Positions 27,686-64,000 of a stretch of 64,000 nt of DNA are shown one piece after another. Position 1 is the first letter of the stretch. Each line of letters opens with the position of its first letter. Origin of the DNA: Macrostomum lignano. Lineage: Eukaryota. Where the stretch lies: positions 93,850-157,849 of the forward strand of contig NIVC01002602.1 in assembly GCA_002269645.1 (NCBI GenBank), read 5' to 3'. The translations under genes and the position numbers were made by a program. The notes beneath the pieces were generated by a model. The model was not told where the DNA came from, did not search any database, and was given only the letters and a program-made list of their open reading frames with translations.

Positions 27686-27720
<35 letters not shown>

Positions 27721-27721
27721 C

Positions 27722-27784
<63 letters not shown>

Positions 27785-28019: not shown

Positions 28020-28050
<31 letters not shown>

Positions 28051-29493: not shown

Positions 29494-29499
29494 AGCAAC
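29486..29499. promoter_or_regulatory. RFX X-box-like palindrome overlapping the HEMK1 start codon (copy B at 39674-39687)
   Basis: GTTGTCATAGCAAC (A) and GTTGCCATAGCAAC (B) fit the GTHNYYATRRNAAC consensus. Confidence 0.35.
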
Positions 29500-36430: not shown

Positions 36431-36959
36431 CGCATCGGCCATTTAGGATAATTTCAATATTGAGTTAAGATAACTGATCAATTCTGGGAGACACTGTCAG
36501 CACAGATAGTAACTAATATGATATCAAAGTTAGCCAGCTAATTGCCAGACTCAGGTAACCGGGTGTCCAATTTCCTCATCATTAGGTAGCAAAAGCAAGT
36601 CAAAGCCAAGAAGCCGTTTTTCTTTGTAGGCGCTTTTTTAATCAAGGCCGTTCAAAGAAGAGAAATTCCCCAGGAAATTAGAAGGGCAACACAGACGGCG
36701 ACACTACAGAAGCTTCTGCAGTTTTGTCTTAGAAGGGAAAAACTGTTGCAATAACATTGGAAAACGTTTTGCTGACCTGCGGAAGGTCGCGAAGCAGACA
36801 GACGGACACGGCACCGGAGCCGGTGCACACCTCGCTGAACAGGCGAGGGCGGGAGAGGCTGTGCGGATGCGATGATGAAGCTCCGACTGCGGACCAGCAC
36901 TGCTTTGCCAGGTCTACCAGCTTCTGCGGGGATGGGGCAGACACTCTGGCTGATGGTAA

Positions 36960-36960
36960 C

Positions 36961-37027
<67 letters not shown>

Positions 37028-37030
37028 GGC

Positions 37031-37103
<73 letters not shown>

Positions 37104-37104
37104 C

Positions 37105-37151
<47 letters not shown>

Positions 37152-37152
37152 C

Positions 37153-37195
<43 letters not shown>

Positions 37196-37365
37196 CAGAG
37201 ACAGACAGACAGGTAGGCAGACAGACACAGAGACAGAGAGACAGACAGGCAGACAGACAGACACAGAGACAGACAGACAGACAGACACAGAGACAGACAG
37301 AGAGAGACAGACAGACAGAGACAGACAGACAGACAGACAGACACAGACACAGAGACAGACAGGCA
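36960..37365. repeat. (GACA)n microsatellite in HEMK1-B intron 3
   Basis: Direct reading. Confidence 0.95.
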
Positions 37366-38009
37366 AAGGCAAGACAAACAGAATGGAGATTTTACATGTA
37401 CCGGAAACCCACCTCCGTCTCGGGCCTGGGAATGAACACGGGAGCTCGCATAACCAAACTGACATCGCGAAAATACCATTCTCCAAGAATGTACTGCAGC
37501 GGCTCCCTTGAAAATTTTATTAACGAGAATTATTACGATATGACTTTATGAGAAACTTTAAACTTGATTAGTTACCTTTGAAGTCTTCTGTTGCATAGGC
37601 CAGTTAGCTTCGATAATTGTTGGGCAGTTAATTCTAAACGACTGTGCTCCCGAGTCAGCTAGGGGTAAACAAATAGTAAACATGCAGAACTCGATAATTT
37701 GAATAGACAGGTAGATTAGATAAGAATAGATGGGTACTGTTATAAGTAAAGGAAGTCGAAGTCTAGTGCTTGATCGTAGCGGCAATTACATTTGTTGGTG
37801 TATATGCCAAACTGAAGCAGAAATTTTCCTTTTTGTATTAAAAAGAAATAGCGGGGTCTCAACTTTAAGCTGCCGGATGGTCAGCAGAGCTTTAAAAGCT
37901 GATTTACTTTTAAATAAAATGATGCACTACTCGTATTAAAGAGGTGCAGTGCTTTTTCTTTCAAAAAGGCCTGCTTGCAGATTTCAAAGTGCTTTAGTGG
38001 CTATTGCTA

Positions 38010-38659
38010 TACTGTCCGTCAAAAGTTCCGGAACCCTTGCTACGATGTCTTCTAGCGGACATAATTTCAGTCTGTTTCAATTGTAACTTGATTCAAATGA
38101 AAGCTGCGGATCTCAGCTCCATGATGTGGTCAAGAAAAAGTTTATTCGAAGGAGCGCGTGTGAACAGGCCAGTGTTATGTACATAAAGGTTAGAGAAAAA
38201 AAGTGAGGAAAAGACCCACCACCGCGTCTCAGTGCTAACAACCGGCATTTTGCTAAGCTGGCTTGTTGACGTAGACCCTGTTTTTTACTCTCCCATGAAA
38301 GCTGACTGCACAAGAATCCATAAGAGCCTGTTGATTTCAACACAAGTTTTGGCCATAGACTAATGTTAGCCAGGCTGAACACTGCGCGCAAACCGTTTCC
38401 TTCCCATGTGTGTTTGCTCCATAGACTCAGCAACCAAAGACAATTGCTTGTTTGTCTTTTCCTCACTTTTTTTCTCTAACCTTTATGTACATAACACTGG
38501 CCTGTTCACACGCGCTCCTTCGAATAAACTTTTTCTTGACCACATCATGGAGCTGAGATCCGCAGCTTTCATTTGAATTAAGTTACAATTGAAACGGACT
38601 GAAATTATGTCCGCTAGAAGACATCGTAGCAAGGGTTCCGGAACTTTTGACGGACAGTA
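38010..38659. mobile_element. Tc1/mariner-type MITE, 650 bp, about 205-bp TIRs, TA target-site duplication
   Basis: TA|TACTGTCCGTCAAAAGTTCCGGAAC ... GTTCCGGAACTTTTGACGGACAGTA|TA; arms differ at 2 positions that I could see; empty site ATTGC-TA-GATATCG in the paralogous intron at about 28735-28748. Confidence 0.92.
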
Positions 38660-38984
38660 TAGCTATCGAGTGTACACACAGCATAATCTATATAGAGATC
38701 ATTAAGTTAAAATGCACTTTGAAACTGCTTTTTTCGACCCTAGATTTGTCCAAGCCAAGTATAAAATGCTCCCTTCTCGGCTAGAGTGGCTTTGCACAGC
38801 GGGGCATTAAGATTATAGTTATAGTCTATGGCCAGCCCAGCTGACCATGTCGGCAGGAACGGAGCTTTTGCATTTCTAGCTCCGGCGCGGAAAGGTTAAT
38901 AGCTCAGAAATAATAGCCATAGACAATAGTCAAAACTAGTCAAAAATAGTGAAAACATATCTATAGCACGATATAACAGCTGTA

Positions 38985-39515
38985 ATCTATAGCGCCATAG
39001 CAACGGATATCATTTGCCCCATAGCAACGGATATCATTAGCTCGATAGCAACGGATATCATTAGCGCCATAGCAACGGATATCATTTGCCCCATATCAAC
39101 GGATATCATTAGCTCGATAGCAACGGATTTCATTAGCTCCATAGCAACGGATATCATTAGCTCGATAGCAACGGATATCATTAGCTCCATAGAAACGAGT
39201 ATCATTAGCTCCATAGCAACGGGTATCATTAGCTCGATAGCAACGGATATCATTAGCTCCATAGAAACGAGTATCATTAGCTCTATAGCAACTGGTATCA
39301 TTTGCCCCATAGCAACGGATATCATTAGCTCGATAGCAACAGATATCATTAGCTCGATAGCAATGGATATCAATAGCACCATAGCAACGGGTATTATTAG
39401 CTCCATAGAAACGAGTATCATTAGCTCTATAACAACGGGTATCATTAGCTTCATAGCAACAGGTTTATTAGCTCCATAGCAACAGGTTTATTAGCCCCAT
39501 AGCAACGGGTATCAT
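38985..39515. repeat. 24-bp minisatellite in HEMK1-B intron 1
   Basis: Paralogue of 29063-29330. Confidence 0.93.
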
Positions 39516-41510
39516 GGCTTAGCTTCATTTCCTAGAATTCCAGTAAAAGTGCACCTCTCACCGTTCGCTGGCCTATGCAGTGAGCCAACAGGTACTTGGC
39601 GCTCGCTCCGGGATCGGGCACGCCGACCTTGGAAAATAGGCGATGCAGACGACTGCGTAGCTTGGATACACGTGTTGCCATAGCAACTGTTAATGCCGGC
39701 ACCTGCGACTGAAGGCCAGGCTGGAACAAGGAACAGGCTGGGTCAAGTAGTTAAACACGAAACGTGGAGTTAAACAATCGATTAAGCTGCACAGTAAGCT
39801 TTTTTAACCAGAATCACCTTAGCAACGATATCAGTATCCGCATAGCAGCTGGAGATTTTAGGCTTAGCAACGGTTGCATCCGCATAGCAACTAGTGTTTT
39901 AAAGCTTAGCAACGGTTGTATCCGCATAGCAACTGGATTCTTTAAGCTCAGCAATGGTTGCATCCGCATAGCAATTGGATTTTTTTTAGCTTAGCAACGG
40001 TCGCATCCGCATAGCAACTGGATTTTTTAAAGCATAGCAACGGCTGTATCCGCATAGCAACCGAGATGTAACTCTAGTAGCAGTAAAGCAACTAGTTGTA
40101 AAAGTTTGCTACTATCATGGACAAACAAATACTAGGAGGTACACTCGGCCCTAAGCAAACTCGAAATTATATTCCCAAAATACACAAGAATACATCTGCA
40201 TTCGCCACTGCAGCCGCAGGACATCAAATGTGGCTCAAGTTAGTTAAGACGAAAGCAGGGCTATTGATAGACACAGCGGCAACAGCAAGAAGCCATACAC
40301 CGAGCACCGAAGCCATAAAAATGTCGTCTTATCCGGAAACTATGAGCCGGCAATATTAATTACTAATATTACTATTATATAGCCTGCTCATTGTTGCTCA
40401 AAGTCGCATACTGAACTAATGCCGTTGAGCTGACGTGTAACAGGCAAAATTAAGAAATGTTATTCTTTTCAATCGTGTACGACTGTAGTTTGCAATCAGT
40501 AAGATGACAGTTTTTGTAACAAGAGTTTATAATTATCACCTTTATCCGGTTGAGCAAACTTTTGCTCATCTTAGCCATTGACTCCGTTTATCAATAAGCT
40601 CAAAGTTGTCAATAGGTTGGCTTAATGCCAAAACAAGACAAGCTTTTAATAAGATTGATACATGGCTGAATGTTAATAATGCTTATTAGTTTTTTTGCTA
40701 ATTTTTCAAGTATCTAAAAGTGGGAATTAAGTCAGGAGGAGCCACACAAAGCCTGGTTCGATTCCCTGAGCAGCCTGATCAGGGAGCTGTCGAGAGATCA
40801 CAGCCATGAAGGCCAGCCCCCTAAGGCTCAGAGAGTGCACATTCCTGACGATTGGAAAGTCAATGGAGACGCTGTACACCCTATAGGAGCGTGTGTTTGA
40901 GTATTGGCGCGCTTGTATATGTTCAGGAGTCAGCGGAATTGGTCAAGGAAAATTCCCTAGAGAAGTTCTGTAGCTCAAGTTAGTTAAGACAACATTAGGC
41001 TACTGTTTAGAAGCCCAAAAAAATCATCTTATCCGGAAACTTTGAGCAGCAAGTAGAAATATTTTAGCCTGCCGATATGTTGCTAAAAAAACATTTTTTG
41101 TAGTTGCTTTAGCTGACGTGTTGACAGGCAAATAATAATAATTGATTACACCTGCCCCAATTAGCTATTGCGCGGCGCATCTGAAAGCTGCGTACGGCTG
41201 TTCAGTCCGAGGACTGGGGGGGAGGTCCCCACACACACCCTCAATTACCCCAGCTAATGCTGGTACTAGAATATGTGGGCTCGTCTGAGGGACTCCGAAG
41301 CTAAATATTATTACCATGTGATTCAACTGTGTGAAAAAGTAAGACAATTTGGAACTGTAAACAATCAATGAGGAGTGATTTTTATTAGCTAAAAGGAATA
41401 AAAACTACTGAACTAGTGCTTTTTTTCAATGAAGCAAAACTTTAAATTTTACATTCTGTTCGTGACTTCTACGACAGTGCATATTTTTGTTATTGTACAT
41501 ACGGGTTGGG

Positions 41511-41888
41511 AATGTCAGGAAGTGTCAATATAGGGTGTCGGGAAGTGTCAATATAGGGTGTCAGGATGTGTCAATATAGGGTGTCAGGATTCGTCAATAT
41601 AGGGTGTCAGGATTCGTCAATATAGGGTGTCAGCAAGTGTCAATATAGGGTGTCAGGATTCGTCAATATAGGGTGTCAGGAAGTGTCAATATAGGGTGTC
41701 AGGAAGTGTCAATATAGCGAGTCAGGAAGTGTCAATATAGAGTGTCAGAAAGTGTCAATATAGGGTGTCAGGAAGTGTCAATATAGGGTGTCAGGAAGTG
41801 TCAATATAGGGTGTCAGGAAGTGTCAATATAGGGTGTCAGGAAGTGTCAATATAGGGTGTCAGGAAGTGTCAATATAGGGTGTCAGGA
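41511..41888. repeat. 23-bp minisatellite AGGGTGTCAGGAAGTGTCAATAT
   Basis: Paralogue of 31358-31730. Confidence 0.95.
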
Positions 41889-51715: not shown

Positions 51716-51933
51716 AGGCCAAACGACACGTCTATACTTTCAGTACCAGAACCAGTACCAGAACTAGTACCAAAAAATAAAACACAAAATACAAGTAAAA
51801 AACGAAAAATAACCAAGAAACATGTCTGAAATAGTACAAAATAAACTCTAGCAATTATTATATGCGTTAACACTGGTTTACCATATTTCGTTTAAGCGAA
51901 TTCTACATACATAATAACTTTATAACCAAAATA

Positions 51934-53697
51934 ACGTATGAAACATTCGCCGACACTTATTCAGACACTTCTACAGACACTTTAGTTTCTGTCGTACGGT
52001 TAGGAACAAGCATTAAATTTGTCTAGGACACTTCCTAATTCATATTTAATGAAATAAAGCAGTCCATGCATAGTTTTAATTTTGAAATTTTGTTTTTGTG
52101 CACTCGTTCCAGACTTTCAAATTATGGCTTTTATCGCGTAGCGTGCACATGCATCGTGTACAACGATTAGCTGCAGTGTGCTAAATAGTTCACTGAGGTA
52201 TTAAAAGCGTACAAGGAGACGAACCTCAAGTATTTGTACATTTTAGTTGAAGTTAAAAGTTCAAGCTTTTAGTGAATCATTGGAAAATAAAACTATCCAT
52301 TTTAAATCGTGCAACATATTGTTTTGTCTTGGACATTTGTGACACTGTCACTTAGGGTTGCAAGGTTTTTAAAAAGAGAAACTGTTGCTTTTCCAATGCT
52401 GAAGTATTTGTGTTGTATGGATCAGGGTTTTTCGTCAAAATTTGGATGCATGTATACATCTAAACATGTATATGCAGATGGAAATATAATAATCAAGATG
52501 CCATATGTATATTTGCCAACATTTTCAGATTTTGTATAAAAATGATCAAGGTTGAGGATTACCCTATGGTATAACTGTTTTCTCCATTTTACTATTTCAA
52601 AGTGCCCACGTGAAGTTAGATTTAGCATGCCAGCCTTAAAAAATAAAAAAATCTACATAGTGTATAATTGTATACTCTTTTATTTAAGGCTATATTATAT
52701 TCCCAATATATTTGCTTAGATAAATCAAAAAGTATTTACTTTACTTGAAAAAAATAATGTTCACTACAAATATTTCAATGTAGAAACCAGGAAACATAAA
52801 CCTATCAAGTCTTATATAGAAATGAAGGATAAAGATATGGATAGAATATAATAAAGCCATTGTGGGCATTAAATATAAAACAAAAGAACCACTTAAGGCA
52901 AAATTTGAAAAAAGTGAATTTTTGGCATGCTCCAAGAAAAGAGGCTTATAATTTGAAATATTTTTGCTTTTGTTTGACAAAAAATATGTATAGATTTATA
53001 CTTTTAGGCAAGGTTTATTTTCTCTTAAAATTCTAATTGTAAATTTGCCAGTAAGCTTAAAAATTGTTGTAAGTTGAAGCTCAAATAAAATTAGTCTTAA
53101 CTCCAATCTGACTTTCCAAAGTAAATCCCTAAATTATTTGTTACAATTGCTTTTAAAAACTTGCCATTTCATTCATTCATTAATCAAAATTTTGTTCTAG
53201 AAACTGATACCTATAGAAGGTTTATAGTTTTTAAGAAATCTAGTAACTAGTGTCAGAGAAATATGTTTATATAGGTTTTATATATATCAACCTTATATAT
53301 AAAAAAGGTTGCACACTGAGATTTAAATACAGCTTCTAACATGTGTGTCCAGAGGTGAGATTATGGCCAACTGCACACCAATGGCATACCAACTCCATAC
53401 TGACATGCCAACTGTATACCAACTGTATACAAACACCATATCAACTCCATACCAATATGCCAACTGCATACCAACTCCATACCAACTGCATACCAACTCC
53501 ATACCAACATGCCAACTGCATACCAACTACATACCAACTGTATGCCAACTGCATACCAACTCCATACCAACATGCCAACTGCATACCAACTCCATACCAA
53601 CTGCATGCCAACTGCATACCAACTACATACCAACTACATACCAACTATACCAACTGTATACCAACACCATACCAACTCCATACCAACTCCATACCAA
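51934..53697 (+). repeat. Left terminal inverted repeat (unique part about 51934-53380 plus about 320-bp 11-bp array)
   Basis: Reverse complement of 60728-63269; substitutions seen at 52299, 52330 and 52889; array unit CCAACT(G/C)CATA. Confidence 0.9.
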
Positions 53698-53907
53698 GAA
53701 TGTTAAATTGCGAGACTCGTAGGAACTTTTAGGTTCTCTTTTTGTACAACTCTTGGGATACTTCTGCCATGTTGCCATCTTTCCTGACTCTTTTGATGAC
53801 TAAAATCGCACTCTTCCATATTCTAGGACCAGTTATTACAAGGCCCACCGGATGCTGTTCTGCCTTGTGTAGGTGCGGTCCTACCATGCCCTTCTCTTTC
53901 TGTCATT

Positions 53908-54816
53908 GTGACGTTCAACAACAGCGATGAACTATCGATTCAGTCGGTTTGCCAGAGGCTTTGCGTTTGCTCACGTTCATTTAATTTTAATCATTCTAAT
54001 ATCCGTGTGCGAGACGGATTTCGTAGGTGCGGACGTGATCGAGTGTCTGTTGTCCAATTAATAACCGATCCTAGCAAGGTTGCATTTTTGCACGGTGTGT
54101 ATGGTTGTGGAAACAAAGGCCACCGTGGTAATGGCATTGCTTGGCTGCAGCGTGTAACTAAGCCACATCTGACGCAGTCAGTTGTCCTACGTCGAGAGAT
54201 TCCGGGTCACCATTTTCAAAGTTCAAAGCGACTGCGGAAGCAAGTTTTGCAGAGCTTTCGGCTCCTTATTTCTTCATGTGATGTGTCTGTTCTTCGTTCT
54301 CTGCTCGTTGTCTCGCGCGGCTTCAGTCAGCTACAATCGACTGTGCACCGTCGGCGTTTCATGCAGCGGCGATCACGCCCAACTGATGAGGAGCAGCGGC
54401 AGCACGCGCTGCAAGACGAGCAGCGGCATTTCGAGCTGGATGAACAGCGGCATCCGCAGATACAGGACGGCCAACGGCAACTCGCACTGCAGGAGGAGCC
54501 GCGGCAGCTCGAGCTGGATGAACAGCGGCATCCGCAGATACAGGACGGCCAACGGCAACTCGCACTGCAGGAGGAGCCGCGGCAGCTCGAGCTGGATGAA
54601 CAGCGGCATCCGCAGATACAGGACGGCCAACGGCAACTCGCACTGCAGGAGGAGCCGCGGCAGCTCGAGCTGGCTGAACAGCGGCAGTCCCAACAGTACG
54701 AGTGTCCCGCTCTTGGACCACTAAAACCAATGCGTCGGAGATCGCAGAGGCCCCAGAGATCTTTAAGGTCGGTCCAACCAGCGATGTCATTGCGCTCGCG
54801 AACGAGGCATGTGTAG
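53908..54816 (+). CDS. Transposon accessory ORF: F-box-like segment followed by three 25-aa Q/E-rich repeats
   Basis: 302-codon open frame (GTG start; first ATG at 54361; 5' end unresolved). GC-rich codons in the 75-bp x3 repeat (54436-54680); segment ISSCDVSVLRSLLVVSRGFSQL at about 54268-54333. Confidence 0.45.
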   Translation: MTFNNSDELSIQSVCQRLCVCSRSFNFNHSNIRVRDGFRRCGRDRVSVVQLITDPSKVAFLHGVYGCGNKGHRGNGIAWLQRVTKPHLTQSVVLRREIPGHHFQSSKRLRKQVLQSFRLLISSCDVSVLRSLLVVSRGFSQLQSTVHRRRFMQRRSRPTDEEQRQHALQDEQRHFELDEQRHPQIQDGQRQLALQEEPRQLELDEQRHPQIQDGQRQLALQEEPRQLELDEQRHPQIQDGQRQLALQEEPRQLELAEQRQSQQYECPALGPLKPMRRRSQRPQRSLRSVQPAMSLRSRTRHV

Positions 54817-54980
54817 TGTGAGCATCTTTTGCGTGTATTTTGTTAGGTAATTGATTGTATTAGTTTCTATATTGTTATTGAATTATTATTTTGCTTTAGT
54901 TAGTCATGCGTTTTTGATGTACTTTTCTCTTGTTAGTTAGAATCTAAAATTGTAAACAGGTTAGAGTTAGACGCCAAATT

Positions 54981-55993
54981 TGTGACTCAGCGGAGGGTTG
55001 AGTTTTCTGCGAACCCCAGCTTTGCGCGGTCAGCCAATCAGAACCGGCCTGGACCCTGGCACGCGGCAAGTTCCAGTTCTACCCGGCGCCGCGGGCACAG
55101 TGCAAATCGGCTTAAGCAAGCGGCCGGCCAGACGACCACCACCCGGCTTGAGGGGGGTTGTGAGGGTTTGACTCTGACTATATATGAAAGTGTATTTGGC
55201 AATCGGATCTCGCCTTCTTTTCCCGGTTCTTGGTTTTGTCCAGCTTCCCGGCCGGTGGCCTGTTTCCCTTTGGTTCGCGCTTTGAGGCGTTTTGAATTCG
55301 TCACCCCCGGTCCATACCTTTGTTCCCCGCCCAACCGCTTTAGTCTTGTAGCGTAACGATTCGGCATCCTTGTCTGACGTCGTCGCTATCAAGCGCGGTT
55401 TAGATAGAGACTGTCGGATCTGATCAAGTACGCGGCCTCGACCCGAGGGCCTCAGTGTCACACTGAAGGGCAGCGCTTATAGAATTTAGTCAGTGCTCCG
55501 TTGAACAGTCGATTCGGCAGTGCTCTTGTTTGAGAGTAGGTTCTGGTTTAGGCCAGGGGTTAGGAGTCTTCTCCGTGGTCGTGTTCGGTTCCTCTTCCTC
55601 TTCTTCTCAGCTGAGATCTGCTTGCCAGTTGCGTAATCTAATTATTATTGTTAACCGTTATCGTCGTTTTGTCAACTCAGTTATCTGCGCCGCTTTGAAC
55701 TTGAATCTTGTAACTATTGAATGTGTCAAATTAAACCGTCAAGTCAATTGCTTATTAGCTATTCTTATAGGATTATCACTCCCTAAATCTTTCGGTTCGT
55801 GTTCCCTCGTGTTCTTTCTTTTCTTGTACTGTACCTGCGGCTATTGGAGAAAGACTGGTAGGACTCGCCGACCGGCGATAGGCAATTAGGGCCAATAGCT
55901 TTAAAATCTCCGAACGCTTCAAGTAGGTTTGTCTAGGGCCTAAATAATTGCTCACCGTGCATGCTATTTATCTAATTGCCTTTATTTATCACA
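54981..55993 (+). mobile_element. Possible solo-LTR-like insert inside the transposon
   Basis: TGTGA...TCACA ends, CCAAT at 55034, TATATAT at 55179, no ORF; no matching TSD (AAATT vs CATGA). Confidence 0.25.
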
Positions 55994-56818
55994 CATGAGT
56001 AACATACTAGGATGATGCGTGACGGTATATCGGATGCGTGTTGAATAACAGTTTGTCCAGCTTCTTTTGCACGAAAATAAGAACGCTGGTATTCGAGCAT
56101 TAAACAAAGTCATACCTTCGTATAGCTTATTGGCTGATCTATTGTACCATGCAACAATTTTCATTGCAACAAAGTATGTAGTTGAATGACTTCAGCGTAG
56201 TAGTAACTATGAGACAAGTACCTTATGTGGTTTTTAATCTATACTTCCTTGAACGATTAATTGTAGTTTATACTTATATTTGAACAGTTTTATTTCCTTT
56301 ACTCGTATTAGTTGTCAGTCCTTGTGTTGAAATAAATTCTTTCGGATAAATAAAGCAAAGGAATGTTTCATGGCACGTATTTCGTTGATTGGAACAATTT
56401 TTTTGTGACATTTATTGGCCTATAAGTGATAAGTGACAGGTGTACAGGTTTCACAGGCCAAAAAAATTACGATTATACTCAAATGGAGAGTATTTAGCTG
56501 CCAGAAAAGAGTATATAGTAGACACTACAAGTTTTAGAACTCACGTTGTCCAAACGGTTTACTAACGGCGTTTAGTCCCAGCTTTTAGCGCATACAGAAA
56601 AATAGAGAATTATAAAATGGCGGTAAACTATAAAATGCAAATCCGTACATGTATATATGTAGACCTTTTCAACACAGTTAAAAGTTTTTGTTATCAATAC
56701 ATTACACAGCACGATCATCAGTTATGAATTTATACTTTCAACGGCATAATACCATTACAAACACGAATAAACTCAAGAAAATAAGTAAACCGTCCACATT
56801 ATGTTAATAACACGGAGA

Positions 56819-57916
56819 TCACCAACACGTTAGCCGTAAAAAAAGAGCGCAGCAGTTTCGCTTCACGTCATTGAATGCCGCTGACAAAGATACTTTTCGT
56901 ACAGTCAAATCACTGACACAGTAGCTAGTGCGGCCACAGAATACGTATGCAATATAGTGACCACTATTCACGCGACTACCAATGTGAACGATGAATGCAC
57001 GAAGCTTGTAGCTTCTGCCACTCAAAGTAAGCTTCATCTCGATGGGTACAACTTTAGTGTTCTTCTCGAATAGTACAGTTTGTCCCTTTCTGCGCTTGAC
57101 AGAGACTCGGCTAATTCCCATGCATATGTGCTCCGACGTTGTTGCAAGTGTTTGTGCATAGCTGCACCCCCGACGTCGCAAGTCGGACAACGGATGTCGG
57201 TGTGGTCTTGAGTAGAAAACAGTGACTGTCTAATGAGTGCCGGGAAATCAAGCGAGTCGTCGTGATCAGGATTGATAAACGTAGAATAGTTGCCGTGTCT
57301 CTAGGTAGCAGTCGTGTCACTTTGAAACAGGCGGAACAACTCAAAGTTGTAGAAATCTACGAAATAAAAAAGATGGATAGGAACAGTACTCATGGTGCAA
57401 CTGTGAAGACCAACACACAGTGGAAGCGCGATTGAAAGGTATTCTTTGCCTTCCCATAAGTCAGCAAAGTATATACTGTCTTCGAAGGTAACTTACAAAT
57501 AAATTTAGATTCAGGATGCAGGCTTAAATCACTTTACTAAAACGCATTTAAATAGTCATAAACTTAATAAACCGTTCACCCTTACCTCGCAGCTAAATCG
57601 CGGTTTGAGCTCAGAAAGAAACAGCATTCCGGTCAGAAACTCTAAGGCACAGTTTTGTGCCATAGGATCCATATGAAATGCTTTACTGCACCACTGAAAC
57701 GCGGCTGAATGCAGCAACAGAACGTCTTTGCCTGTCATTAGGCAGTTAAGGAACAGCGCAAGTGGTGAATCTGCATCACACGATAGTGCGCTCGTTAATG
57801 TTGCAACCAAGCATTGACTGGCGGCATTGAAAGCACAATACGTGCCCGTCGGATTCGGTGGCCCTCTGGCGACCGTGGCGATAGTGCAGGAAATGACACC
57901 GCAGTGTCGGCGCGTC
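56819..57916 (-). pseudogene. USP/peptidase C19 (ubiquitin C-terminal hydrolase) domain inside the transposon; two exons, frameshifted as written
   Basis: Exon 57916-57586 has the Cys box GPPNPTGTYCAFNAASQCL and QNCALEFL; exon from 57356 has CSAC, SLDFPALIRQ..RCPTC, and the His box YKLRAFIVHIGSRVNSGHYIAY..VSDLTV. The second exon needs three single-base corrections (about 57270, 57157, 56840). Confidence 0.75.
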
Positions 57917-58321
57917 CTAATAAAATTGGCGGTTAGGAACGAATTTACCATCAAAATGTCCCAGTGAACAGCCCAGTCACATCCATTTAACAACAAAAAA
58001 TGCGCCTCGACGTAAGCAAAAGAAACGAAACTTAAAAGTACAAATACTTATGGAAAGCAACATGTTGAATGCTAATTCATGGAAATTAGTAAAACTTAAA
58101 AGGGCATAATCGGTGACACGAAAAGCAAAAAATGATGGAATCATAAACTTTAGATCTCTAATCAGAGAACAATCACGTAACAGAAACGTGCATCATACGG
58201 AACATGTTGGATTGTGCAATATAAATACCTGTGCCAGTCGAGACGGAGGAGGCCTACAAAGAGAGTTGATTGATAAGGTTGCACCTTACCCACAAGTTGC
58301 TGAGACATGGCACATACATTA

Positions 58322-60658
58322 CTACGACAGATCTAGTGGGAGACGCAAATTGTGGCGGAGTGAGTGTACGGCGTATACACAATACGTAAACCAATACAAG
58401 GGTTGACTGAAGGTATTTCTAAACTGAAAAAATGCAATTTCATCACTCACAATTTGCTCATCTGGTAGGCTCTGACAGGTGGTATTCTGTGCTGTTGGTG
58501 CAGGTGAAATGCCCGAGCGAGACCCACTTGCAGCAGGCGCAGCTAGAGTACAGGTCGTGCGTGCAATAGCAGGCCGAACCTGGACAATGACGGGCTGGCT
58601 GCCCGAGCGAGACCCACTTGCAGCAGGCGCAGCTAGAGTACAGGTCGTGGGTGCAACGGCTGGCGGAATTGATAATGCCGATTGAATGAAGCTGGTTCTT
58701 TGTCTTTTTGAGGCTCTTGACCTTTTCCAGGGATCTCCAGGTGGGTTTAACGGAGCATCAAAGCCACATTTGCGTCCTCTAGCACGCTTCGGGGGGCGAA
58801 TTGGATGTTGCTCGTGCTGCAACCGCTTCAGTTGCAGTTTTACGGTTGTTAGTTGCGCACGGACAAATCTTGGTAACCTGAGCCGAGAACTTGGAGAAGG
58901 CAGTGCTTCGCTTTTGCCCCAGCTGAACCATGATTCAACAGCGGCGTTGGTCACGTGTGCGCTACGATTTCCTCCAAACACTGCCACACTCCAAAGAGGA
59001 AACAGTGACATCCACTTTCGCAATACAACCTGAACAGCCTGAGGGTAGAAAAGATTGTTCAGCACGCCATTGCCATCGCTTGCTGTCACTTCGCTTGTCA
59101 AATCGTTGAAGTACTTCGCAAAAGGTGATGAGGCTCGTAGTCCAGTCTCCAATTCAGCCAATGCGACGTCTTCTTGCACTGCATTTGAGACATTAGCAGA
59201 ATCTTCAGCCACTTGGTTTTCATCAGGAATCTCCAACGAACTGAAGTCGAACCTACCATGTAGAATTTGTAAAGCCTTCAAAGTGGCAGGACCTACTCGC
59301 CTGGAGGTAAACACCTCGACCATTGCCTTCCAAACAGCTTGGGCGCAACGCAAAGTTTTCGACGTCACTAATAGTGCAAAAGAGAGCATGAACTCGCGAT
59401 AAGTAACCTTATCGATTTTATTTGGTGACTTCAAAGTCCTGGCAACAGCGCGCAGCAAATGCGAGCTACAGATAAACACAACAGGAGATTCAGGTGGCTT
59501 CAGATCAGCACTCCGAAGTCGATTGTACTGTACACGCAGGTAGTCTGTAACACAGGTCGTACATGCGGCTCGGAGAATACCATGAATGAAAACCCAGCTA
59601 AAGTCAGACACGTAGATTTGCGGACCTTTCTTGGGTAGTTCCCACAGTCCTATGTTGCAGTGACGAGCGAAATCTGCTAAAAAATGCATTAGCCAACTGG
59701 ACACATTTTCCGAGCGCGTGACCTCCATGATGCTTTCTGATACAGCTGTTCTCTTTATATCCGGGGTTGCAACAACAGCACTGCACAGAAGTACAGTGCT
59801 CGGCACGTTCTGGGTCTGTCGCACAATTCCGCCGGTGGAGTCTAAGTGGAGAGGAGCAAGCTGATTGCCTTTCAGCACGTCGCGAAGCAAATCCAACTGC
59901 ATGGAGGTATGGAGAATCACACCAACTGGTGCAACGTCAATCTTTTGGATATAGCCGCTAATGACTCCATCCTCGTTTATAGTCAACTTCCAGTCTTTCA
60001 TTTGGAGTCTTAAATCTCTTATGTCGTCTGGAGACTTGTCGTCGGCAGCTTTTGTCCGACTAACAGTTGTACGGACAGCAGATAGAGAGCATGCTTCGCT
60101 ACCAAACAGCTCGATTGCTTTCACATAGATCTGCGTTGGCTTGGCAGCAGCGTTGTTGGCCTGAGATAAAACAAAGTTACGGCACTCTTGTGAACCTCGT
60201 TGCCACAGATAGCGATAAGAGGAACAACTTGATGGAACATCATTCCTCGAGTGCTCTGAGATTCTTCGTAGCGTCAGTGTAGAGGACTGCCCATCAGTCG
60301 GCGCCTTGTTTAAGGTGACGACGAATGCCATACTGCAACCAGAGCCTTCGGCACAGACTAGGCGCATCCAAAGAAAACTGCAGTCCTTCCGATGGCGCTT
60401 AAATGCACGCAGTCTAACCTTATTAACTGAGAACTGACAATACTCACCATGCTGTCTTAACAGTAGATAAATGACTTCATCAAACCAAGAAGGCTTAAGT
60501 TTACAAGTTCTTGTATCAAAGTGATTCACGAAGAGATTAGTTGATATGCATGATTCCACAAAAACACCTCCAGCAGAAAAAACTTGTGCACCAGCAGCAC
60601 CTGACTGGTCACCGCTAATGGCTTCAGAAGTGTCGTACACACTTTTCTTCGCTGCCAT
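58322..60658 (-). CDS. MULE/NOF-like DDE transposase (778-aa open frame)
   Basis: N-terminal Cys/His region (VCAEGSGC...SEH), GYIQKIDVAPVGVILHTSMQL, LHLDSTGG (D, about 59841), VSDFSWVFIH (D, about 59604), FICSSHLL (CxxH, about 59465), NAAVESWF (E, about 58935), which is the MULE catalytic signature. Confidence 0.85.
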   Translation of the reverse strand: MAAKKSVYDTSEAISGDQSGAAGAQVFSAGGVFVESCISTNLFVNHFDTRTCKLKPSWFDEVIYLLLRQHGEYCQFSVNKVRLRAFKRHRKDCSFLWMRLVCAEGSGCSMAFVVTLNKAPTDGQSSTLTLRRISEHSRNDVPSSCSSYRYLWQRGSQECRNFVLSQANNAAAKPTQIYVKAIELFGSEACSLSAVRTTVSRTKAADDKSPDDIRDLRLQMKDWKLTINEDGVISGYIQKIDVAPVGVILHTSMQLDLLRDVLKGNQLAPLHLDSTGGIVRQTQNVPSTVLLCSAVVATPDIKRTAVSESIMEVTRSENVSSWLMHFLADFARHCNIGLWELPKKGPQIYVSDFSWVFIHGILRAACTTCVTDYLRVQYNRLRSADLKPPESPVVFICSSHLLRAVARTLKSPNKIDKVTYREFMLSFALLVTSKTLRCAQAVWKAMVEVFTSRRVGPATLKALQILHGRFDFSSLEIPDENQVAEDSANVSNAVQEDVALAELETGLRASSPFAKYFNDLTSEVTASDGNGVLNNLFYPQAVQVVLRKWMSLFPLWSVAVFGGNRSAHVTNAAVESWFSWGKSEALPSPSSRLRLPRFVRAQLTTVKLQLKRLQHEQHPIRPPKRARGRKCGFDAPLNPPGDPWKRSRASKRQRTSFIQSALSIPPAVAPTTCTLAAPAASGSRSGSQPVIVQVRPAIARTTCTLAAPAASGSRSGISPAPTAQNTTCQSLPDEQIVSDEIAFFQFRNTFSQPLYWFTYCVYAVHSLRHNLRLPLDLS

Positions 60659-60727
60659 GCAAAGAAGCCTGAAACATGAAACAATGGTATGAATTTGCCA
60701 TGTTTTCGTTTAGTGTGGCATAATATA

Positions 60728-63269
60728 AGTTGGCATGTTGGTATGTAGTTGGTATGTTGGTATGGAGTTGGTATGCAGTTGGCATGCAGTTGGTATGGAG
60801 TTGGTATGCAGTTGGCATGCAGTTGGTATGGAGTTGGTATGCAGTTGGCATGCAGTTGGTATGGAGTTGGTATGCAGTTGGCATGTTGGTATGGAGTTGG
60901 TATGCAGTTGGCATATTGGTATGGAGTTGGTATGTTGGTATGGAGTTGGTATGCAGTTGGCATACAGTTGGTATGGAGTTGGTATACAGTTGGCATACAG
61001 TTGGTATGCAGTTGGCATGTTGGTATGGAGTTGGTATGCAGTTGGCATGCAGTTGGTATATAGTTGGTATAGAGTTGGTATGCAGTTGGTATGCAGTTGG
61101 CATGCAGTTGGTATATAGTTGGTATAGAGTTGGTATGCAGTTGGTATGCAGTTGGTATGGAGTTGGTATGGTGTTGGTATGCAGTTGGCATGTTGGTATG
61201 TAGTTGGTATGCAGTTGGCATACAGTTGGTATGGAGTTGGTATGCAGTTAGCATGTTGGTATGGAGTTGGTATGCAGTTGGCATGTTGGTATGGAGTTGG
61301 TATGCAGTTGGCATACAGTTGGTATGGTGTTGGTATACAGTTGGCATGTTGGAATATAGTTGGTATGGTCGTATGGAGTTGGTATGCAGTTGGCATGTTG
61401 GAATATAGTTGGTATGGAGTTGGTATGCAGTTGGTATGCAGTTGGCATGTTGGCATATAGTTGGTATAGAGTTGGTATGCAGTTGGCATGCAGTTGGTAT
61501 GTAGTTGGTATGCAGTTGGCATGCAGTTGGTATGTAGTTGGTATGCAGTTGGTATGCAGTTGGTATGCAGTTGGCATGTTGGTATATAGTTGGTATAGAG
61601 TTGGTATGCAGTTGGTATGCAGTTGGCATGCAGTTGGTATGTAGTTGGTATGCAGTTGGCATGTTGGTATGGAGTTGGTATGCAGTTGGTATGGAGTTGG
61701 TATGCAGTTGGTATGGAGTTGGTATGCAGTTGGCATATTGGTATGGAGTTGATATGGTGTTTGTATACAGTTGGTATACAGTTGGTATACAGTTGGCATG
61801 TCAGTATGGAGTTGGTATGCCATTGGTGTGCAGTTGGCCATAATCTCACCTCTGGACACACATGTTAGAAGCTGTATTTAAATCTCAGTGTGCAACCTTT
61901 TTTATATATAAGGTTGATATATATAAAACCTATATAAACATATTTCTCTGACACTAGTTACTAGATTTCTTAAAAACTATAAACCTTCTATAGGTATCAG
62001 TTTCTAGAACAAAATTTTGATTAATGAATGAATGAAATGGCAAGTTTTTAAAAGCAATTGTAACAAATAATTTAGGGATTTACTTTGGAAAGTCAGATTG
62101 GAGTTAAGACTAATTTTATTTGAGCTTCAACTTACAACAATTTTTAAGCTTACTGGCAAATTTACAATTAGAATTTTAAGAGAAAATAAACCTTGCCTAA
62201 AAGTATAAATCTATACATATTTTTTGTCAAACAAAAGCAAAAATATTTCAAATTATAAGCCTCTTTTCTTGGAGCATGCCAAAAATTCACTTTTTTCAAA
62301 TTTTGCCTTAAGTGATTCTTTTGTTTTATATTTAATGCCCACAATGGCTTTATTATATTCTATCCATATCTTTATCCTTCATTTCTATATAAGACTTGAT
62401 AGGTTTATGTTTCCTGGTTTCTACATTGAAATATTTGTAGTGAACATTATTTTTTTCAAGTAAAGTAAATACTTTTTGATTTATCTAAGCAAATATATTG
62501 GGAATATAATATAGCCTTAAATAAAAGAGTATACAATTATACACTATGTAGATTTTTTATTTTTTAAGGCTGGCATGCTAAATCTAACTTCACGTGGGCA
62601 CTTTGAAATAGTAAAATGGAGAAAACAGTTATACCATAGGGTAATCCTCAACCTTGATCATTTTTATACAAAATCTGAAAATGTTGGCAAATATACATAT
62701 GGCATCTTGATTATTATATTTCCATCTGCATATACATGTTTAGATGTATACATGCATCCAAATTTTGACGAAAAACCCTGATCCATACAACACAAATACT
62801 TCAGCATTGGAAAAGCAACAGTTTCTCTTTTTAAAAACCTTGCAACCCTAAGTGACAGTGTCACAAATGTCCGAGACAAAACAATATGTTGCACGATTTA
62901 AAACGGATAGTTTTATTTTCCAATGATTCACTAAAAGCTTGAACTTTTAACTTCAACTAAAATGTACAAATACTTGAGGTTCGTCTCCTTGTACGCTTTT
63001 AATACCTCAGTGAACTATTTAGCACACTGCAGCTAATCGTTGTACACGATGCATGTGCACGCTACGCGATAAAAGCCATAATTTGAAAGTCTGGAACGAG
63101 TGCACAAAAACAAAATTTCAAAATTAAAACTATGCATGGACTGCTTTATTTCATTAAATATGAATTAGGAAGTGTCCTAGACAAATTTAATGCTTGTTCC
63201 TAACCGTACGACAGAAACTAAAGTGTCTGTAGAAGTGTCTGAATAAGTGTCGGCGAATGTTTCATACGT
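60728..63269 (-). repeat. Right terminal inverted repeat (about 1.1-kb 11-bp array 60728-61830 plus unique part)
   Basis: Array unit TATG(C/G)AGTTGG; the unique part mirrors 51934-53380 (also visible as mirrored ORFs 52741/62224 and 52422/62575). Confidence 0.9.
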
Positions 63270-64000
63270 CAAAAATACGATTCTCGATGTAATGCCTATT
63301 TAAAAACTAAAACACCGTATGAAGAAACTGGGAGCCCTCTAATCAAAACTTAAAACAAACAAATAAAACCAAAAAAACCTATCAATAAAGGCTAAAATAA
63401 AAATATACCAAAAAGTGCATGTATAGGCTCTATAGGTTCAATTCTTGTAAATTTTAACGATATTATCACTATAGTGTACTTTGGCTTTGGTGAGTACGAA
63501 GCTGAAAGCTGAGATCTGGAAGGAAAACGCGCATTATCTGGAAGGAATTATCTGCAGGGCATTATCTGGAAGAAGAAGGCATTATCTGGAAGGAAACATT
63601 ATCAATCTAGAAGCCTGCAAGACGTCAAAGCTCCATCTGTTCCATACTCGAACTTACAGACTCCAAGTTCCCCTGCTTAGTACATTAATATGCAGAAAGT
63701 AGGCCTACTTTAGTGTACTTTGGCAAAAACCATTGTGAGTACAAAGCTCACAATGCGATTTAAAATAGGTAATTAAGCATTATTCTGTCAATGAAAAATA
63801 TTGAGTATAAGGATTGCTCATAATATTTGGCTTATTATAACGAAGAGCTTGCGTGCACGGCCGCCGTTCACGTAAGCTCAGAATTGGCACGGCAGAGCTA
63901 TATCTTATAGGCTTATACAGTAAGTCATATACTATTCGAATTAATATTCAAGTTAACAAAAAAACAATGAATTAAGATTTACATTTGCAGTCCATGGTGT

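What the first reader, a model, noticed from the sequence alone, without database searches (positions are those of the whole stretch)
51934..63269. Young foldback Mutator/NOF-like transposon with two convergent genes and ubiquitin-system cargo
Seen: about 1.45-kb TIRs with only three substitutions that I could find, inner 11-bp arrays, a candidate 8-bp TSD (1 mismatch), an uninterrupted 778-aa DDE ORF read inward from the right arm, a USP domain behind it, and a second ORF read inward from the left arm. Known: Drosophila FB-NOF has long internally repetitive TIRs around a MULE-related gene; maize MuDR transcribes two genes convergently from its TIRs; several DNA transposon groups carry Ulp1 or OTU proteases. 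Inference: a potentially active element combining a transposase, a C19 deubiquitinase and an F-box-like accessory protein, i.e. a TE toolkit for editing host ubiquitin marks (anti-silencing or transposase stabilisation). I cannot confirm novelty without a database search.
Basis: partly seen in the sequence, partly recalled or inferred. Interest (0 to 1): 0.85.

Follow-up and report, generated by a model that had tools for sequence, protein, structure and literature searches.

The report
Flatworm foldback transposon carrying a deubiquitinase
This 11-kb jumping gene of the flatworm Macrostomum lignano belongs to the already known NOF/Rehavkus group of foldback transposons, but its transposase is joined to a ubiquitin-removing (USP) domain, and this particular copy is partly broken.

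Summary
Window 51934-63269 is an 11,336-bp DNA transposon with 1.43-kb inverted arms (3 mismatches), inner 11-bp arrays and an 8-bp target duplication. Four more full-length copies lie at unrelated sites in Macrostomum lignano.

The 778-aa ORF has no Pfam match, but it is a Rehavkus-type transposase. It hits published Rehavkus cores (E 1e-10). Its family profile hits all six of them (1e-84 to 3e-25) and Drosophila NOF (2e-73), but not plant MuDR/Jittery cores. A confident AlphaFold model resembles the IS256-family transposase ISCth4 plus a WRKY zinc finger.

The USP is not a chance capture, because all five copies have it. In copy L001 a three-exon model gives an uninterrupted 1,086-aa transposase-USP fusion. 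About one relative in five carries a Ulp1, OTU or USP protease at the same C-terminal position.

The window copy is the oldest and is damaged. It has three 1-nt homopolymer frameshifts in the USP, ORF2's start codon reads TAG, and a 1.2-kb nested insertion is present.

The "F-box" reading of ORF2 has no support. ORF2 is lineage-specific and of unknown function.

Verdict: a new variant of a known kind, of moderate interest.

The parts
51926..51933 (.). Left target-site duplication, CCAAAATA
   Evidence: It differs by one mismatch from the right copy. The other four insertions have perfect 8-9 bp duplications.
51934..53366 (+). Left terminal inverted repeat, unique-sequence part (AT-rich, 1,433 nt)
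   Evidence: 99.7% reverse-complementary to 61838-63269. It is 96-98% identical to the arms of four other copies.
53367..53697 (+). Left subterminal array, about 31 units of the 11-bp repeat CCAACTNCATA
   Evidence: Tandem Repeats Finder and unit census. The ORF2-side array holds 22-88 units across the five copies.
53827..54816 (+). ORF2 remnant, read inward from the left arm. The start-codon position 53824-53826 reads TAG here and ATG in the four other copies, where ORF2 is 379 aa. It contains 78-bp in-frame repeats at 54394-54686.
   Evidence: It is annotated as a hypothetical protein (P0156) from RNA-seq-based models. It has no Pfam match and no outside homologue.
54816..55993 (.). Nested insertion of 1,178 bp, private to the window copy, flanked by the 8-bp duplication CATGTGTA / CATGAGTA (54808-54815 and 55994-56001)
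   Evidence: It is absent from L001, L002, L004 and L005. No TIR, Pfam match or second copy was found.
56819..57356 (-). USP exon 3: two CxxC zinc-ribbon pairs, the His box SGHYIAYV and an Asp. In this copy it is broken by 1-nt homopolymer differences near 57271 (T vs TT) and 57171 (G5 vs G6), and the C-terminal tail is changed by T7 vs T6 at 56844.
   Evidence: Pfam UCH gives 30.2 bits on the window piece and 33-36 bits on the intact L001 exon, against a cut-off of 23.9. The His box aligns to USP12 and USP30.
57357..57585 (-). Inferred intron 2 (GTAAGG ... TCGTAG, phase 0)
   Evidence: Canonical splice signals. Joining the exons restores the USP motif RFSCE|ISTTLSCSAC, which aligns without a gap to a solved USP. 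There is no transcript evidence.
57586..57916 (-). USP exon 2 with a Cys-box-like motif, NPTGTYCAFNAASQCL. In this copy it is out of frame with the upstream exon because the G-run near 57865 is G3, not the G4 seen in the four other copies.
   Evidence: The acceptor TTATTAG|GA is used by two independent gene models (P0001, P0152). The Cys box is identified by motif only and has no statistical support.
57917..58527 (-). Inferred intron 1, running from the donor GCTGCAA|GTGGGT inside the last minisatellite unit. An alternative donor, CAAATT|GTGAGT at 58450, is the one used in the RNA-seq-derived model P0001.
   Evidence: The UniRef model P0152 joins ...CTLAAPAA directly to RRADTAVSF....
58322..60658 (-). 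Transposase ORF, 778 aa unspliced (exon 1 of the fusion model is 58528-60658). The WRKY-like zinc module is about 60257-60562 (C74, C102, C108, H136). The DDE core is about 58814-59950, with D273 (59840-59842), D352 (59603-59605), C397xxH400 (59459-59470) and E575 (58934-58936).
   Evidence: No Pfam match. 572 relatives in the exhaustive HMMER search. Conserved residues from alignments. Published Rehavkus cores and NOF are hit. AlphaFold pLDDT 84. Foldseek gives ISCth4, the P element transposase and AtWRKY18.
58510..58668 (-). In-frame 90-bp minisatellite in the transposase C-terminal region (2 units here, 5-6 in the other copies). Each unit carries a candidate splice donor.
   Evidence: (family D5). 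A 'minisatellite in Cterm' is a listed Rehavkus feature (PMC6446971 Table 1).
60737..61837 (-). Right subterminal array, about 104 units of the same 11-bp repeat in inverted orientation. It ends 78 nt upstream of the transposase ATG.
   Evidence: The transposase-side array holds 93-260 units across copies and is always about 3 times the ORF2-side array.
61838..63269 (-). Right terminal inverted repeat, unique-sequence part
63270..63277 (.). Right target-site duplication, CAAAAATA

Best explanation
Window 51934-63269 is one copy of a cut-and-paste DNA transposon of Macrostomum lignano. It belongs to the Rehavkus group, the foldback lineage that also contains Drosophila NOF and is a distant sister of Mutator-like elements.

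Shown:
- The element has 1.43-kb inverted arms followed by inverted arrays of an 11-bp unit, and it inserts with an 8-bp (sometimes 9-bp) target duplication.
- The family transposed recently. Four other copies differ by 0.05-0.15% in the transposase.
- The transposase combines an N-terminal WRKY-type zinc finger with an IS256/Mutator-like DDE core (D273, D352, CxxH, E575) and a C-terminal coding minisatellite.

Inferred, about 60% likely: the gene continues through two short introns into a USP (C19) deubiquitinase domain, giving a 1,086-aa transposase-USP fusion. This parallels the Ulp1, OTU or USP domains fused at the same place in about one relative in five.

Inferred, weaker:
- The 11-bp arrays are phased binding sites for the zinc-finger domain, and together with the arms they provide inward-facing promoters for the transposase gene and for the convergent ORF2.
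- The protease removes ubiquitin from the transposase itself or from chromatin at the transposition site. That would stabilise the enzyme or counter a host ubiquitin-dependent restriction.

The window copy is an older insertion, 1.2% diverged. Its transposase ORF is intact, but its USP has three 1-nt frameshifts, ORF2's start codon is lost, and a 1.2-kb foreign insertion is present. At best it could be mobilised in trans.
For: - Architecture and mobility.
- Rehavkus membership: phmmer of the window protein against published Rehavkus-3_TC, -1_TC and -1_HR gives E 1.6e-10, 9e-10 and 7.7e-8 at Z=1e6. The family profile hits all six published cores end to end at 9e-85 to 3e-25 and NOF at 2e-73. 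Plant MuDR/Jittery cores score under 5 bits.
- Fold: AlphaFold pLDDT 84. Foldseek top hits are ISCth4 (E 3e-5, probability 1.0), the P element transposase (4e-4) and the AtWRKY18 DNA-binding domain (probability 0.99, TM 0.64).
- USP: Pfam UCH at 36.3 bits against a cut-off of 23.9. The His box aligns to USP12 and USP30.
- Fusion: the L001 product is uninterrupted for 1,086 aa. The independent model P0152 makes the same exon 1-2 junction. In the four young copies no in-frame ATG lies between the upstream stop and the Cys box, so that exon cannot be translated on its own.
- Precedents: Pfam on 80 relatives found Ulp1 in 13, OTU in 2, UCH in 1 and PHD in 13. In the clam protein XP_053374366.1 the USP Cys box lies in the same exon as the transposase C-terminus.
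- Transcription: the Mlig_3_7 gene models are RNA-seq-derived.
Against: - The RNA-seq-derived model P0001 uses a different donor (DEQI|GTGAGT). That donor puts the USP out of frame and ends the protein 40 residues later.
- Only one of five copies, L001, has the whole fusion open. The G5/G6 run near 57171 is in the broken state in three of five copies.
- The Cys-box exon has no statistical match to any USP, so the domain could be catalytically dead.
- Intron 2 has no transcript support.
- The 40%-identical sister family in the same genome has no USP.
- Divergence between the window copy and L001 looks neutral in the transposase (4 synonymous and 20 non-synonymous changes, pN/pS 1.5), so selection cannot be demonstrated.
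- The TSD is 8 bp in most copies, whereas published Rehavkus elements have 9 bp.
- No PHD finger is present.
- Promoter activity, repeat binding and deubiquitinase activity are all untested.
Confidence: 0.7

Rival explanations
1. The transposase alone is the functional product. The USP exons are a decaying passenger, either a formerly captured host fragment or a dead domain, transcribed only as 3' UTR.
For: - The RNA-seq-based model P0001 splices out of frame with the USP.
- USP frameshifts are present in four of five copies, and the transposase ORF itself is broken in L005.
- The Cys-box half is not recognisable statistically.
- The sister family lacks a USP.
Against: - The USP region is kept in all five copies.
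- Every frameshift is a 1-nt change in a homopolymer in PacBio-based or unknown assemblies, so each could be an assembly error.
- L001 reads through 1,086 aa.
- No close host USP paralogue exists that could be the source of a recent capture.
- The same transposase-to-USP order occurs in a clam relative, and motif spacing is collinear in NOF.
Confidence: 0.25
2. It is a MuDR-like two-gene system. ORF2 would be an essential accessory protein, analogous to MURB or an F-box adaptor, expressed convergently from the identical arm promoter.
For: - ORF2 is a 379-aa ATG-initiated frame in four of five copies, and all length differences between copies are in frame.
- It has an RNA-seq-derived gene model.
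- It starts 126 nt inside the left array, mirroring the transposase start 78 nt inside the right array.
Against: - No F-box or other Pfam domain is found.
- No homologue exists outside copies of this element.
- About 40% of it is tandem repeat that is also open in a second frame.
- There are too few substitutions to show selection.
- Published Rehavkus elements have one ORF.
Confidence: 0.3
3. The element belongs to the hAT or P superfamily rather than the Mutator/Rehavkus lineage.
For: The TSD is 8 bp in most copies. The P element transposase is the third-best structural match. Some foldback elements, such as Galileo, are P-type.
Against: No hAT or P Pfam models match the window protein or the 80 relatives scanned. 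HMM matches to Rehavkus and NOF are strong. The best structural match is the IS256-family ISCth4, and the N-terminal domain is WRKY-type, not THAP or BED.
Confidence: 0.03

Closest known systems
Rehavkus elements (Repbase: Rehavkus-1_TC, -3_TC, -1_HR, -2_NVi, -1_DY, Rehavkus1_AP)
   Same: The transposase core is homologous. Both have long TIRs, subterminal tandem repeats whose number varies between copies, and a minisatellite in the C-terminal coding region.
   Different: - The host phylum is Platyhelminthes, whereas Dupeyron et al. 2019 list only Arthropoda and Annelida.
- The TSD is mostly 8 bp rather than 9 bp.
- There is no PHD finger.
- A USP domain follows the transposase.
- A second, convergent ORF is present.
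- The arms are longer (1.43 kb unique sequence plus arrays, against 26-412 bp listed).
FB-NOF of Drosophila melanogaster (the NOF protein)
   Same: NOF matches the family profile at E 2e-73, and its core is almost identical to Rehavkus-1_DY. Both are foldback elements with internally repetitive arms. NOF's C-terminus has NTCPFDS, CKIC and GHYIAY motifs spaced as in the M. lignano USP (140 vs 142 and 216 vs 215 residues), with local similarity at p of about 0.01.
   Different: NOF's C-terminus gets no Pfam UCH or PDB USP match, so its USP nature is only a lead. Direct phmmer of the M. lignano fusion against NOF found nothing at Z=1e6, so the two are distant members of one family.
Mutator-like elements (maize MuDR, Jittery, Phantom)
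   Same: Both have an IS256/Mutator-type DDE fold with a CxxH motif and a WRKY-GCM1 zinc-finger DNA-binding domain. TSDs fall in the 8-11 bp range. MuDR has two convergent genes read from its TIRs (own knowledge).
   Different: No Pfam MULE, Transposase_mut, FLYWCH or DBD_Tnp_Mut match is found. Plant MULE cores score under 5 bits. Profile-profile comparison aligns only the second Asp and the CxxH motif (P 0.007). The spacing from the second Asp to the Glu is 223 residues, against roughly 110 in MULEs. ORF2 is unrelated to MURB.
Mercenaria mercenaria XP_053374366.1 (P0043)
   Same: It is a Rehavkus-family transposase core (27% identity) followed by a Pfam-supported UCH domain. Its Cys box GNTCW lies in the same exon as the transposase C-terminus.
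   Different: The two USP domains are not significantly similar to each other (BLASTP E 2.4; permutation 251 of 3,000). Shared ancestry and independent acquisition cannot be told apart. The clam gene is spread over 16 kb and may be domesticated or interrupted.
Other transposons with ubiquitin or ubiquitin-like proteases: Ulp1 in KI-MULEs and Ginger, OTU and VTD in Helitrons/Helentrons
   Same: A papain-fold thiol protease for ubiquitin or SUMO is encoded within, or fused to, the transposition protein (PMC9741609 and PMC2836005; KI-MULEs from own knowledge).
   Different: The protease class here is USP/C19. The papers I could search do not report that class as a transposon component.
ISCth4 transposase (IS256 family, PDB 6xgx)
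   Same: It is the best structural match to the catalytic core. IS256 is the accepted bacterial relative of Mutator transposases (own knowledge).
   Different: Sequence identity is 8-10%. It is a bacterial IS with no WRKY domain, no large helical insertion of this size and no protease.

Membership tests
Rehavkus DNA transposons | Transposase DDE core homologous to the Rehavkus reference transposases | tested here: met
   The window protein against Rehavkus-3_TC, -1_TC and -1_HR gives E 1.6e-10, 9e-10 and 7.7e-8 (Z=1e6). The family profile hits all six reference cores full length at 9e-85 to 3e-25. The plant MULE control scores under 5 bits.
Rehavkus DNA transposons | [quoted passage not shown] | tested here: met
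   The arms are 1,433 nt at 99.7% identity, followed by 11-bp arrays of 22-88 and 93-260 units across five copies.
Rehavkus DNA transposons | Minisatellite at the C-terminal end of the transposase gene | tested here: met
   A 90-bp in-frame repeat is present in 2-6 units. The sister family P0154 also has C-terminal repeats.
Rehavkus DNA transposons | 9-bp target-site duplication | tested here: inconclusive
   All five insertions share at least 8 duplicated bases, with one mismatch in the window copy. L001 has 9. L002 and L004 become 9 if the terminal T is assigned to the target. The length is 8-9 bp, not a clean 9.
Rehavkus DNA transposons | PHD finger in the transposase | tested here: not met
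   Pfam finds no PHD finger in the window ORF. Only 13 of 80 relatives have one, so it is a frequent accessory rather than a universal feature. Here a USP occupies the C-terminal position.
Rehavkus DNA transposons | Single ORF | tested here: not met
   A second, convergent 379-aa ORF with its own gene model is present in four of five copies.
Mutator superfamily in the strict sense (MuDR, Jittery, Phantom) | Sequence match to MULE transposase models or cores | tested here: not met
   No Pfam MULE-type model matches the window protein or any of the 80 relatives. The HMM scores under 5 bits on five plant cores. hhalign gives probability 5% and P 0.007. Phantom cores were not tested.
Mutator superfamily in the broad sense (including IS256) | IS256/Mutator-type RNase H-like DDE fold with a CxxH motif, plus an N-terminal WRKY-GCM1 zinc finger | tested here: met
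   Foldseek finds ISCth4 at E 3e-5 (probability 1.0) and the AtWRKY18 DNA-binding domain at probability 0.99, using a model with pLDDT 84. D273, D352, C397, H400 and E575 are invariant or nearly so.
USP/UCH (peptidase C19) deubiquitinases | Pfam UCH match above the gathering threshold | tested here: met
   The score is 36.3 bits against a cut-off of 23.9 (E 6e-9), but only profile positions 124-254, the C-terminal half, are aligned.
USP/UCH (peptidase C19) deubiquitinases | His box with the catalytic His and the downstream Asp/Asn | tested here: met
   YKLRAAIVHIGSRVNSGHYIAYV aligns to the His boxes of USP12 and USP30. An Asp follows in ...YCVSDLTV....
USP/UCH (peptidase C19) deubiquitinases | Cys box with the catalytic Cys | tested here: inconclusive
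   The motif NPTGTYCAFNAASQCL sits at the expected distance from the other motifs. The exon gives no Pfam or PDB match, and BLASTP against the clam USP does not align it.
USP/UCH (peptidase C19) deubiquitinases | Open reading frame through the domain in the window copy | tested here: not met
   Three 1-nt homopolymer differences shift the frame in the window copy. The domain is open only in L001.
USP/UCH (peptidase C19) deubiquitinases | Isopeptidase activity on ubiquitin | not testable with these tools
   This needs a biochemical assay.
   No F-box family appears at E up to 1 for the window ORF2. No homologues outside the element were found.

The most novel reading that the evidence does not exclude
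Rehavkus/NOF-type transposases as a clade depend on removing ubiquitin or a ubiquitin-like modifier. They would have recruited three different protease classes (Ulp1, OTU, USP) at the same C-terminal position, repeatedly or anciently. The classical Drosophila NOF protein would itself carry an unrecognised, highly divergent USP domain. In the M. lignano element, the choice of splice donor inside a copy-number-variable coding minisatellite would switch between a transposase-only product and a transposase-USP product.
Probability: 0.3. Interest if true: 0.65.

Novelty: new variant of a known kind. Interest (0 to 1): 0.45.

Why it matters
- It places a well-preserved, very recently active Rehavkus/NOF-type foldback transposon in a transgenic model flatworm. 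That extends the group beyond the arthropods and annelids reported so far. It also offers intact copies (L001) for functional work on a poorly studied branch next to Mutator.
- It adds the USP class to the ubiquitin and ubiquitin-like proteases found in transposons (Ulp1, OTU, VTD).
- About one in five relatives of this transposase carries such a protease at the same C-terminal position. That makes the long-standing question of why transposons carry these proteases testable in a single protein family.
- It gives a concrete lead that Drosophila NOF may have the same layout.
- The variable 11-bp arrays, next to a window that is otherwise a mosaic of minisatellites, bear on how foldback elements seed satellite DNA.

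Tried and rejected
- Pfam on the 778-aa ORF gave nothing.
- A sequence search of the PDB with the protein and with the family profile gave nothing.
- Single-sequence AlphaFold failed at pLDDT 33. It worked only with the 82-sequence alignment.
- The word-indexed homologue search found only a paralogue and one borderline hit. The exhaustive HMMER search was needed.
- The exact product of the window ORF is not on record. Copies had to be reached through the paralogues P0001 and P0156.
- F-box or any other domain in ORF2: rejected. ORF2 homologues outside the element: none.
- A close host USP as the source of a recent capture: none found.
- USP in the 40%-identical sister family: absent within 10 kb.
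- A standalone ATG-initiated USP gene: possible only in the window copy (G3 state). It is rejected as the ancestral state because the four young copies have no in-frame ATG.
- Cys-box exon against the PDB: no USP hit.
- NOF C-terminus against Pfam and the PDB: no USP hit.
- The semi-global permutation test was uninformative because free end gaps gave a trivial alignment. Only the local test is used.
- TIRs for the nested insertion: none found.
- Other elements in the window with the same terminus: none.
- Pfam on six long ORFs elsewhere in the window gave nothing. They lie in tandem arrays.
- The selection test on the transposase is consistent with neutrality and has too few changes to be informative.
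- Repbase and Dfam could not be searched, so I cannot exclude that this consensus is already deposited there.

Full report
**1. The observation.**
The described structure is present at the stated coordinates.
- The arms 51934-53366 and 61838-63269 are reverse complements, 99.7% identical over 1,433 nt. The outer 1,350 nt have 3 mismatches and 2 gap columns.
- Inside each arm lies an array of an 11-bp unit, CCAACT[G/C/A]CATA. There are about 31 units at 53367-53697 and about 104 at 60737-61837, in inverted orientation.
- The 18-nt terminus occurs only at the two ends of the element.
- The flanks are CCAAAATA and CAAAAATA.
- A 778-aa ORF (58322-60658, minus strand) starts 78 nt inside the right array.
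- A USP-like segment follows it on the same strand.
- An open frame (53827-54816, plus strand) is read inward from the left arm.

**2. It is a mobile element with several young copies.**
The nearest protein is a Macrostomum lignano hypothetical protein at 95% identity. Through that protein and the ORF2 product I retrieved four more full-length copies from assembly GCA_002269645.1. They are L001, L002, L004 and L005, of 12.3-13.5 kb.
- All have the same termini and unrelated flanks.
- Each has its own target duplication: GTACACTGT, TTATTAAT, TTCTGAAG and GAAAATAA. The TSD is therefore 8 bp, or 9 in some copies depending on how the terminal T is assigned.
- The four copies differ by 0.05-0.15% in the transposase, and their two arms are essentially identical. 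The window copy is 1.2% away from them.
- Array sizes vary widely (22-88 and 93-260 units). The transposase-side array is always about three times the other.

**3. What the transposase is.**
Pfam, PDB sequence searches and single-sequence folding gave nothing. An exhaustive HMMER search found 572 relatives.
- Alignments show an invariant or nearly invariant D273 (DATGS), D352 (DFSW), C397-x2-H400 and E575 (TNxxVENWF). They also show an N-terminal C...C...C...H module.
- The literature describes Rehavkus as foldback transposons with long TIRs, variable subterminal tandem repeats, a C-terminal minisatellite, a PHD finger and 9-bp TSDs. It is treated as part of, or outgroup to, MULEs (PMC6446971; bioRxiv 10.1101/2024.12.02.626372).
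- I took the six published Rehavkus cores from the supplement of PMC6446971. The window protein hits three of them directly (E 1.6e-10 to 7.7e-8 at Z=1e6). The family profile hits all six end to end (9e-85 to 3e-25).
- Five plant MuDR/Jittery cores from the same file score under 5 bits. Profile-profile comparison aligns only the second Asp and the CxxH motif (P 0.007).
- The NOF-FB protein from the same file matches the profile at 2e-73, and its core is almost identical to Rehavkus-1_DY.
- With the 82-sequence alignment, AlphaFold gave a confident model (pLDDT 84, pTM 0.75). Its best structural matches are the IS256-family transposase ISCth4 (E 3e-5), then the P element transposase. For the N-terminal module the match is the AtWRKY18 DNA-binding domain (probability 0.99, TM 0.64).
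- This fits the accepted kinship between IS256 and Mutator and the WRKY-GCM1 DNA-binding domain of that superfamily (own knowledge).

**4. The USP.**
In the window copy the USP pieces lie in three frames. Comparison of copies shows that every small indel is a 1-nt difference in a homopolymer.
- In L001 the C-terminal exon is one clean 175-aa frame. It has two CxxC pairs, the His box SGHYIAYV and an Asp.
- Pfam UCH scores 36.3 bits against a cut-off of 23.9, but only over the C-terminal half of the profile. The His box aligns to USP12 and USP30.
- An independent UniRef gene model (A0A1I8HZW9, P0152) joins the transposase minisatellite (...CTLAAPAA) directly to RRADTAVSF...NPTGTYCAFNAASQCL. That corresponds to the donor GCTGCAA|GTGGGT (phase 1) and the acceptor TTATTAG|GA.
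- Adding a second canonical intron (RFSCE|GTAAGG...TCGTAG|ISTT) gives an uninterrupted 1,086-aa transposase-USP protein in L001. The product stops at 1,018 aa in L002 and 1,048 aa in L004 (one G5/G6 difference each), at 636 aa in L005 (the transposase is broken) and at 750 aa in the window copy.
- In the four young copies there is no in-frame ATG between the upstream stop and the Cys box. That exon therefore needs an upstream coding exon.

Against the fusion:
- The RNA-seq-derived NCBI model P0001 uses the donor DEQI|GTGAGT, which puts the USP out of frame.
- The Cys-box exon has no statistical match to USPs.
- No close USP exists elsewhere in the database, so this is not a recent capture of a host gene.

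**5. The protease theme in the family.**
Pfam scans of 80 relatives found Ulp1 (C48) in 13, PHD in 13, YqaJ exonuclease in 4, OTU in 2 and UCH in 1. None matched a MULE, hAT or P model.
- The UCH case is a RefSeq protein of the clam Mercenaria mercenaria. Its Cys box (GNTCW) lies in the same exon as the end of the transposase.
- Ulp1 and OTU examples come from a beetle and a rotifer.
- The clam and flatworm USPs are not significantly similar to each other.
- NOF's C-terminus has NTCPFDS, CKIC and GHYIAY motifs with the same spacing as the flatworm USP. Local similarity gives p of about 0.01 (29 of 3,000 shuffles). It gets no Pfam or PDB support, so this is a lead and not a result.
- A 40%-identical second Rehavkus family in M. 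lignano has C-terminal minisatellites but no USP.
- The searchable papers on Rehavkus, MULEs, foldback elements and transposon-borne deubiquitinases do not mention a USP-class domain in a transposon.

**6. ORF2.**
In four copies ORF2 is a 379-aa ATG-initiated frame (MDQLLQGPP...), and all length differences between copies are in frame. In the window copy the ATG reads TAG.
- It has an RNA-seq-derived gene model (P0156).
- It has no Pfam domain, no F-box, and no homologue outside this element.
- About 40% of it is a 78-bp repeat that is also open in a second frame.
- Its function is unknown. A MURB-like accessory role is only an analogy.

**7. State of the window copy.**
The transposase ORF is intact. 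Four lesions are present:
- The G-run before the Cys box is G3 instead of G4.
- The run near 57271 is T instead of TT, and the run near 57171 is G5 instead of G6.
- ORF2 has lost its start codon.
- A 1,178-bp foreign segment (54816-55993) sits exactly at the ORF2 stop codon, flanked by an 8-bp duplication.

Some of the 1-nt differences may be assembly errors. Divergence from L001 in the transposase is compatible with neutral drift (4 synonymous and 20 non-synonymous changes).

**8. Mechanism, and how sure each step is.**
- Shown: cut-and-paste insertion with 8-9 bp duplications, recent activity, and a DDE enzyme of the Rehavkus/NOF kind with a WRKY-type DNA-binding domain.
- Inferred, about 0.6: a spliced transposase-USP fusion.
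- Inferred by analogy with Ac, Galileo and MULE subterminal repeats (and own knowledge): the 11-bp arrays, spaced about one helical turn apart, act as multiple transposase-binding sites. The identical arms drive the two inward-facing genes.
- Speculative: the USP protects the transposase from ubiquitin-dependent degradation, or removes a chromatin or restriction mark. This is the same idea proposed for OTU and VTD domains of Helitrons (PMC9741609).

**9. Verdict.**
The finding is real. The new elements are the host phylum, the USP-class domain attached to the transposase, the convergent lineage-specific ORF2, and the family-wide pattern of C-terminal ubiquitin and ubiquitin-like proteases. I rate it a new variant of a known kind, of moderate interest.

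Noticed in passing
window 1-47500: The rest of the window is a mosaic of more than 40 different short-period tandem arrays (periods 4-133 bp, each 0.2-1.2 kb). Several form inverted, foldback-like pairs, for example 12431-13287 with 13797-14729 (20-mer) and 16408-17016 with 17488-17984 (23-mer). None carries this element's terminus. They could be remnants of other foldback elements or satellites seeded by them.
   Followed up: partly
window 26301-31731 and 35299-41888: A direct segmental duplication of about 6-10 kb. The same 22-, 24-, 42- and 23-mer arrays recur in the same order.
   Followed up: no
window 54816-55993: A nested 1,178-bp insertion private to the window copy, flanked by the 8-bp duplication CATGTGTA/CATGAGTA, exactly at the ORF2 stop codon. 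It has no TIR, no Pfam match and no second copy in the sequence held. It is an unidentified mobile element or a filler insertion.
   Followed up: partly
NOF-FB protein (supplement of PMC6446971), residues about 790-1056: The classical Drosophila NOF protein is a Rehavkus-type transposase (profile E 2e-73). Its C-terminus carries Cys-box-like, CxxC and GHYIAY motifs spaced as in a USP. Pfam and the PDB give no support. This may be an unrecognised divergent USP domain.
   Followed up: partly
relatives P0010-P0150 (alignment A3): Four of 41 Rehavkus-family proteins carry YqaJ or viral alkaline-exonuclease domains. This is another recurrent accessory of the transposase family.
   Followed up: no
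L003:4617-7340 (NIVC01000130) and proteins P0003/P0154: A second Rehavkus family in M. lignano, 40% identical. It has long C-terminal coding minisatellites (8-aa and 11-aa repeats) and no USP within 10 kb.
   Followed up: partly
window 58510-58668; L001:12036-12396: Each unit of the 90-bp coding minisatellite carries a candidate splice donor (GCTGCAA|GTGGGT), and the unit number varies from 2 to 6 between copies. Copy-number change could therefore alter both protein length and splice choice.
   Followed up: no
L006:44050-54008 (Mercenaria mercenaria CM038769.1): The gene next to the clam transposase-USP gene carries a Ulp1 (Peptidase_C48) domain. This suggests a cluster of related elements or fragments there.
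   Followed up: no
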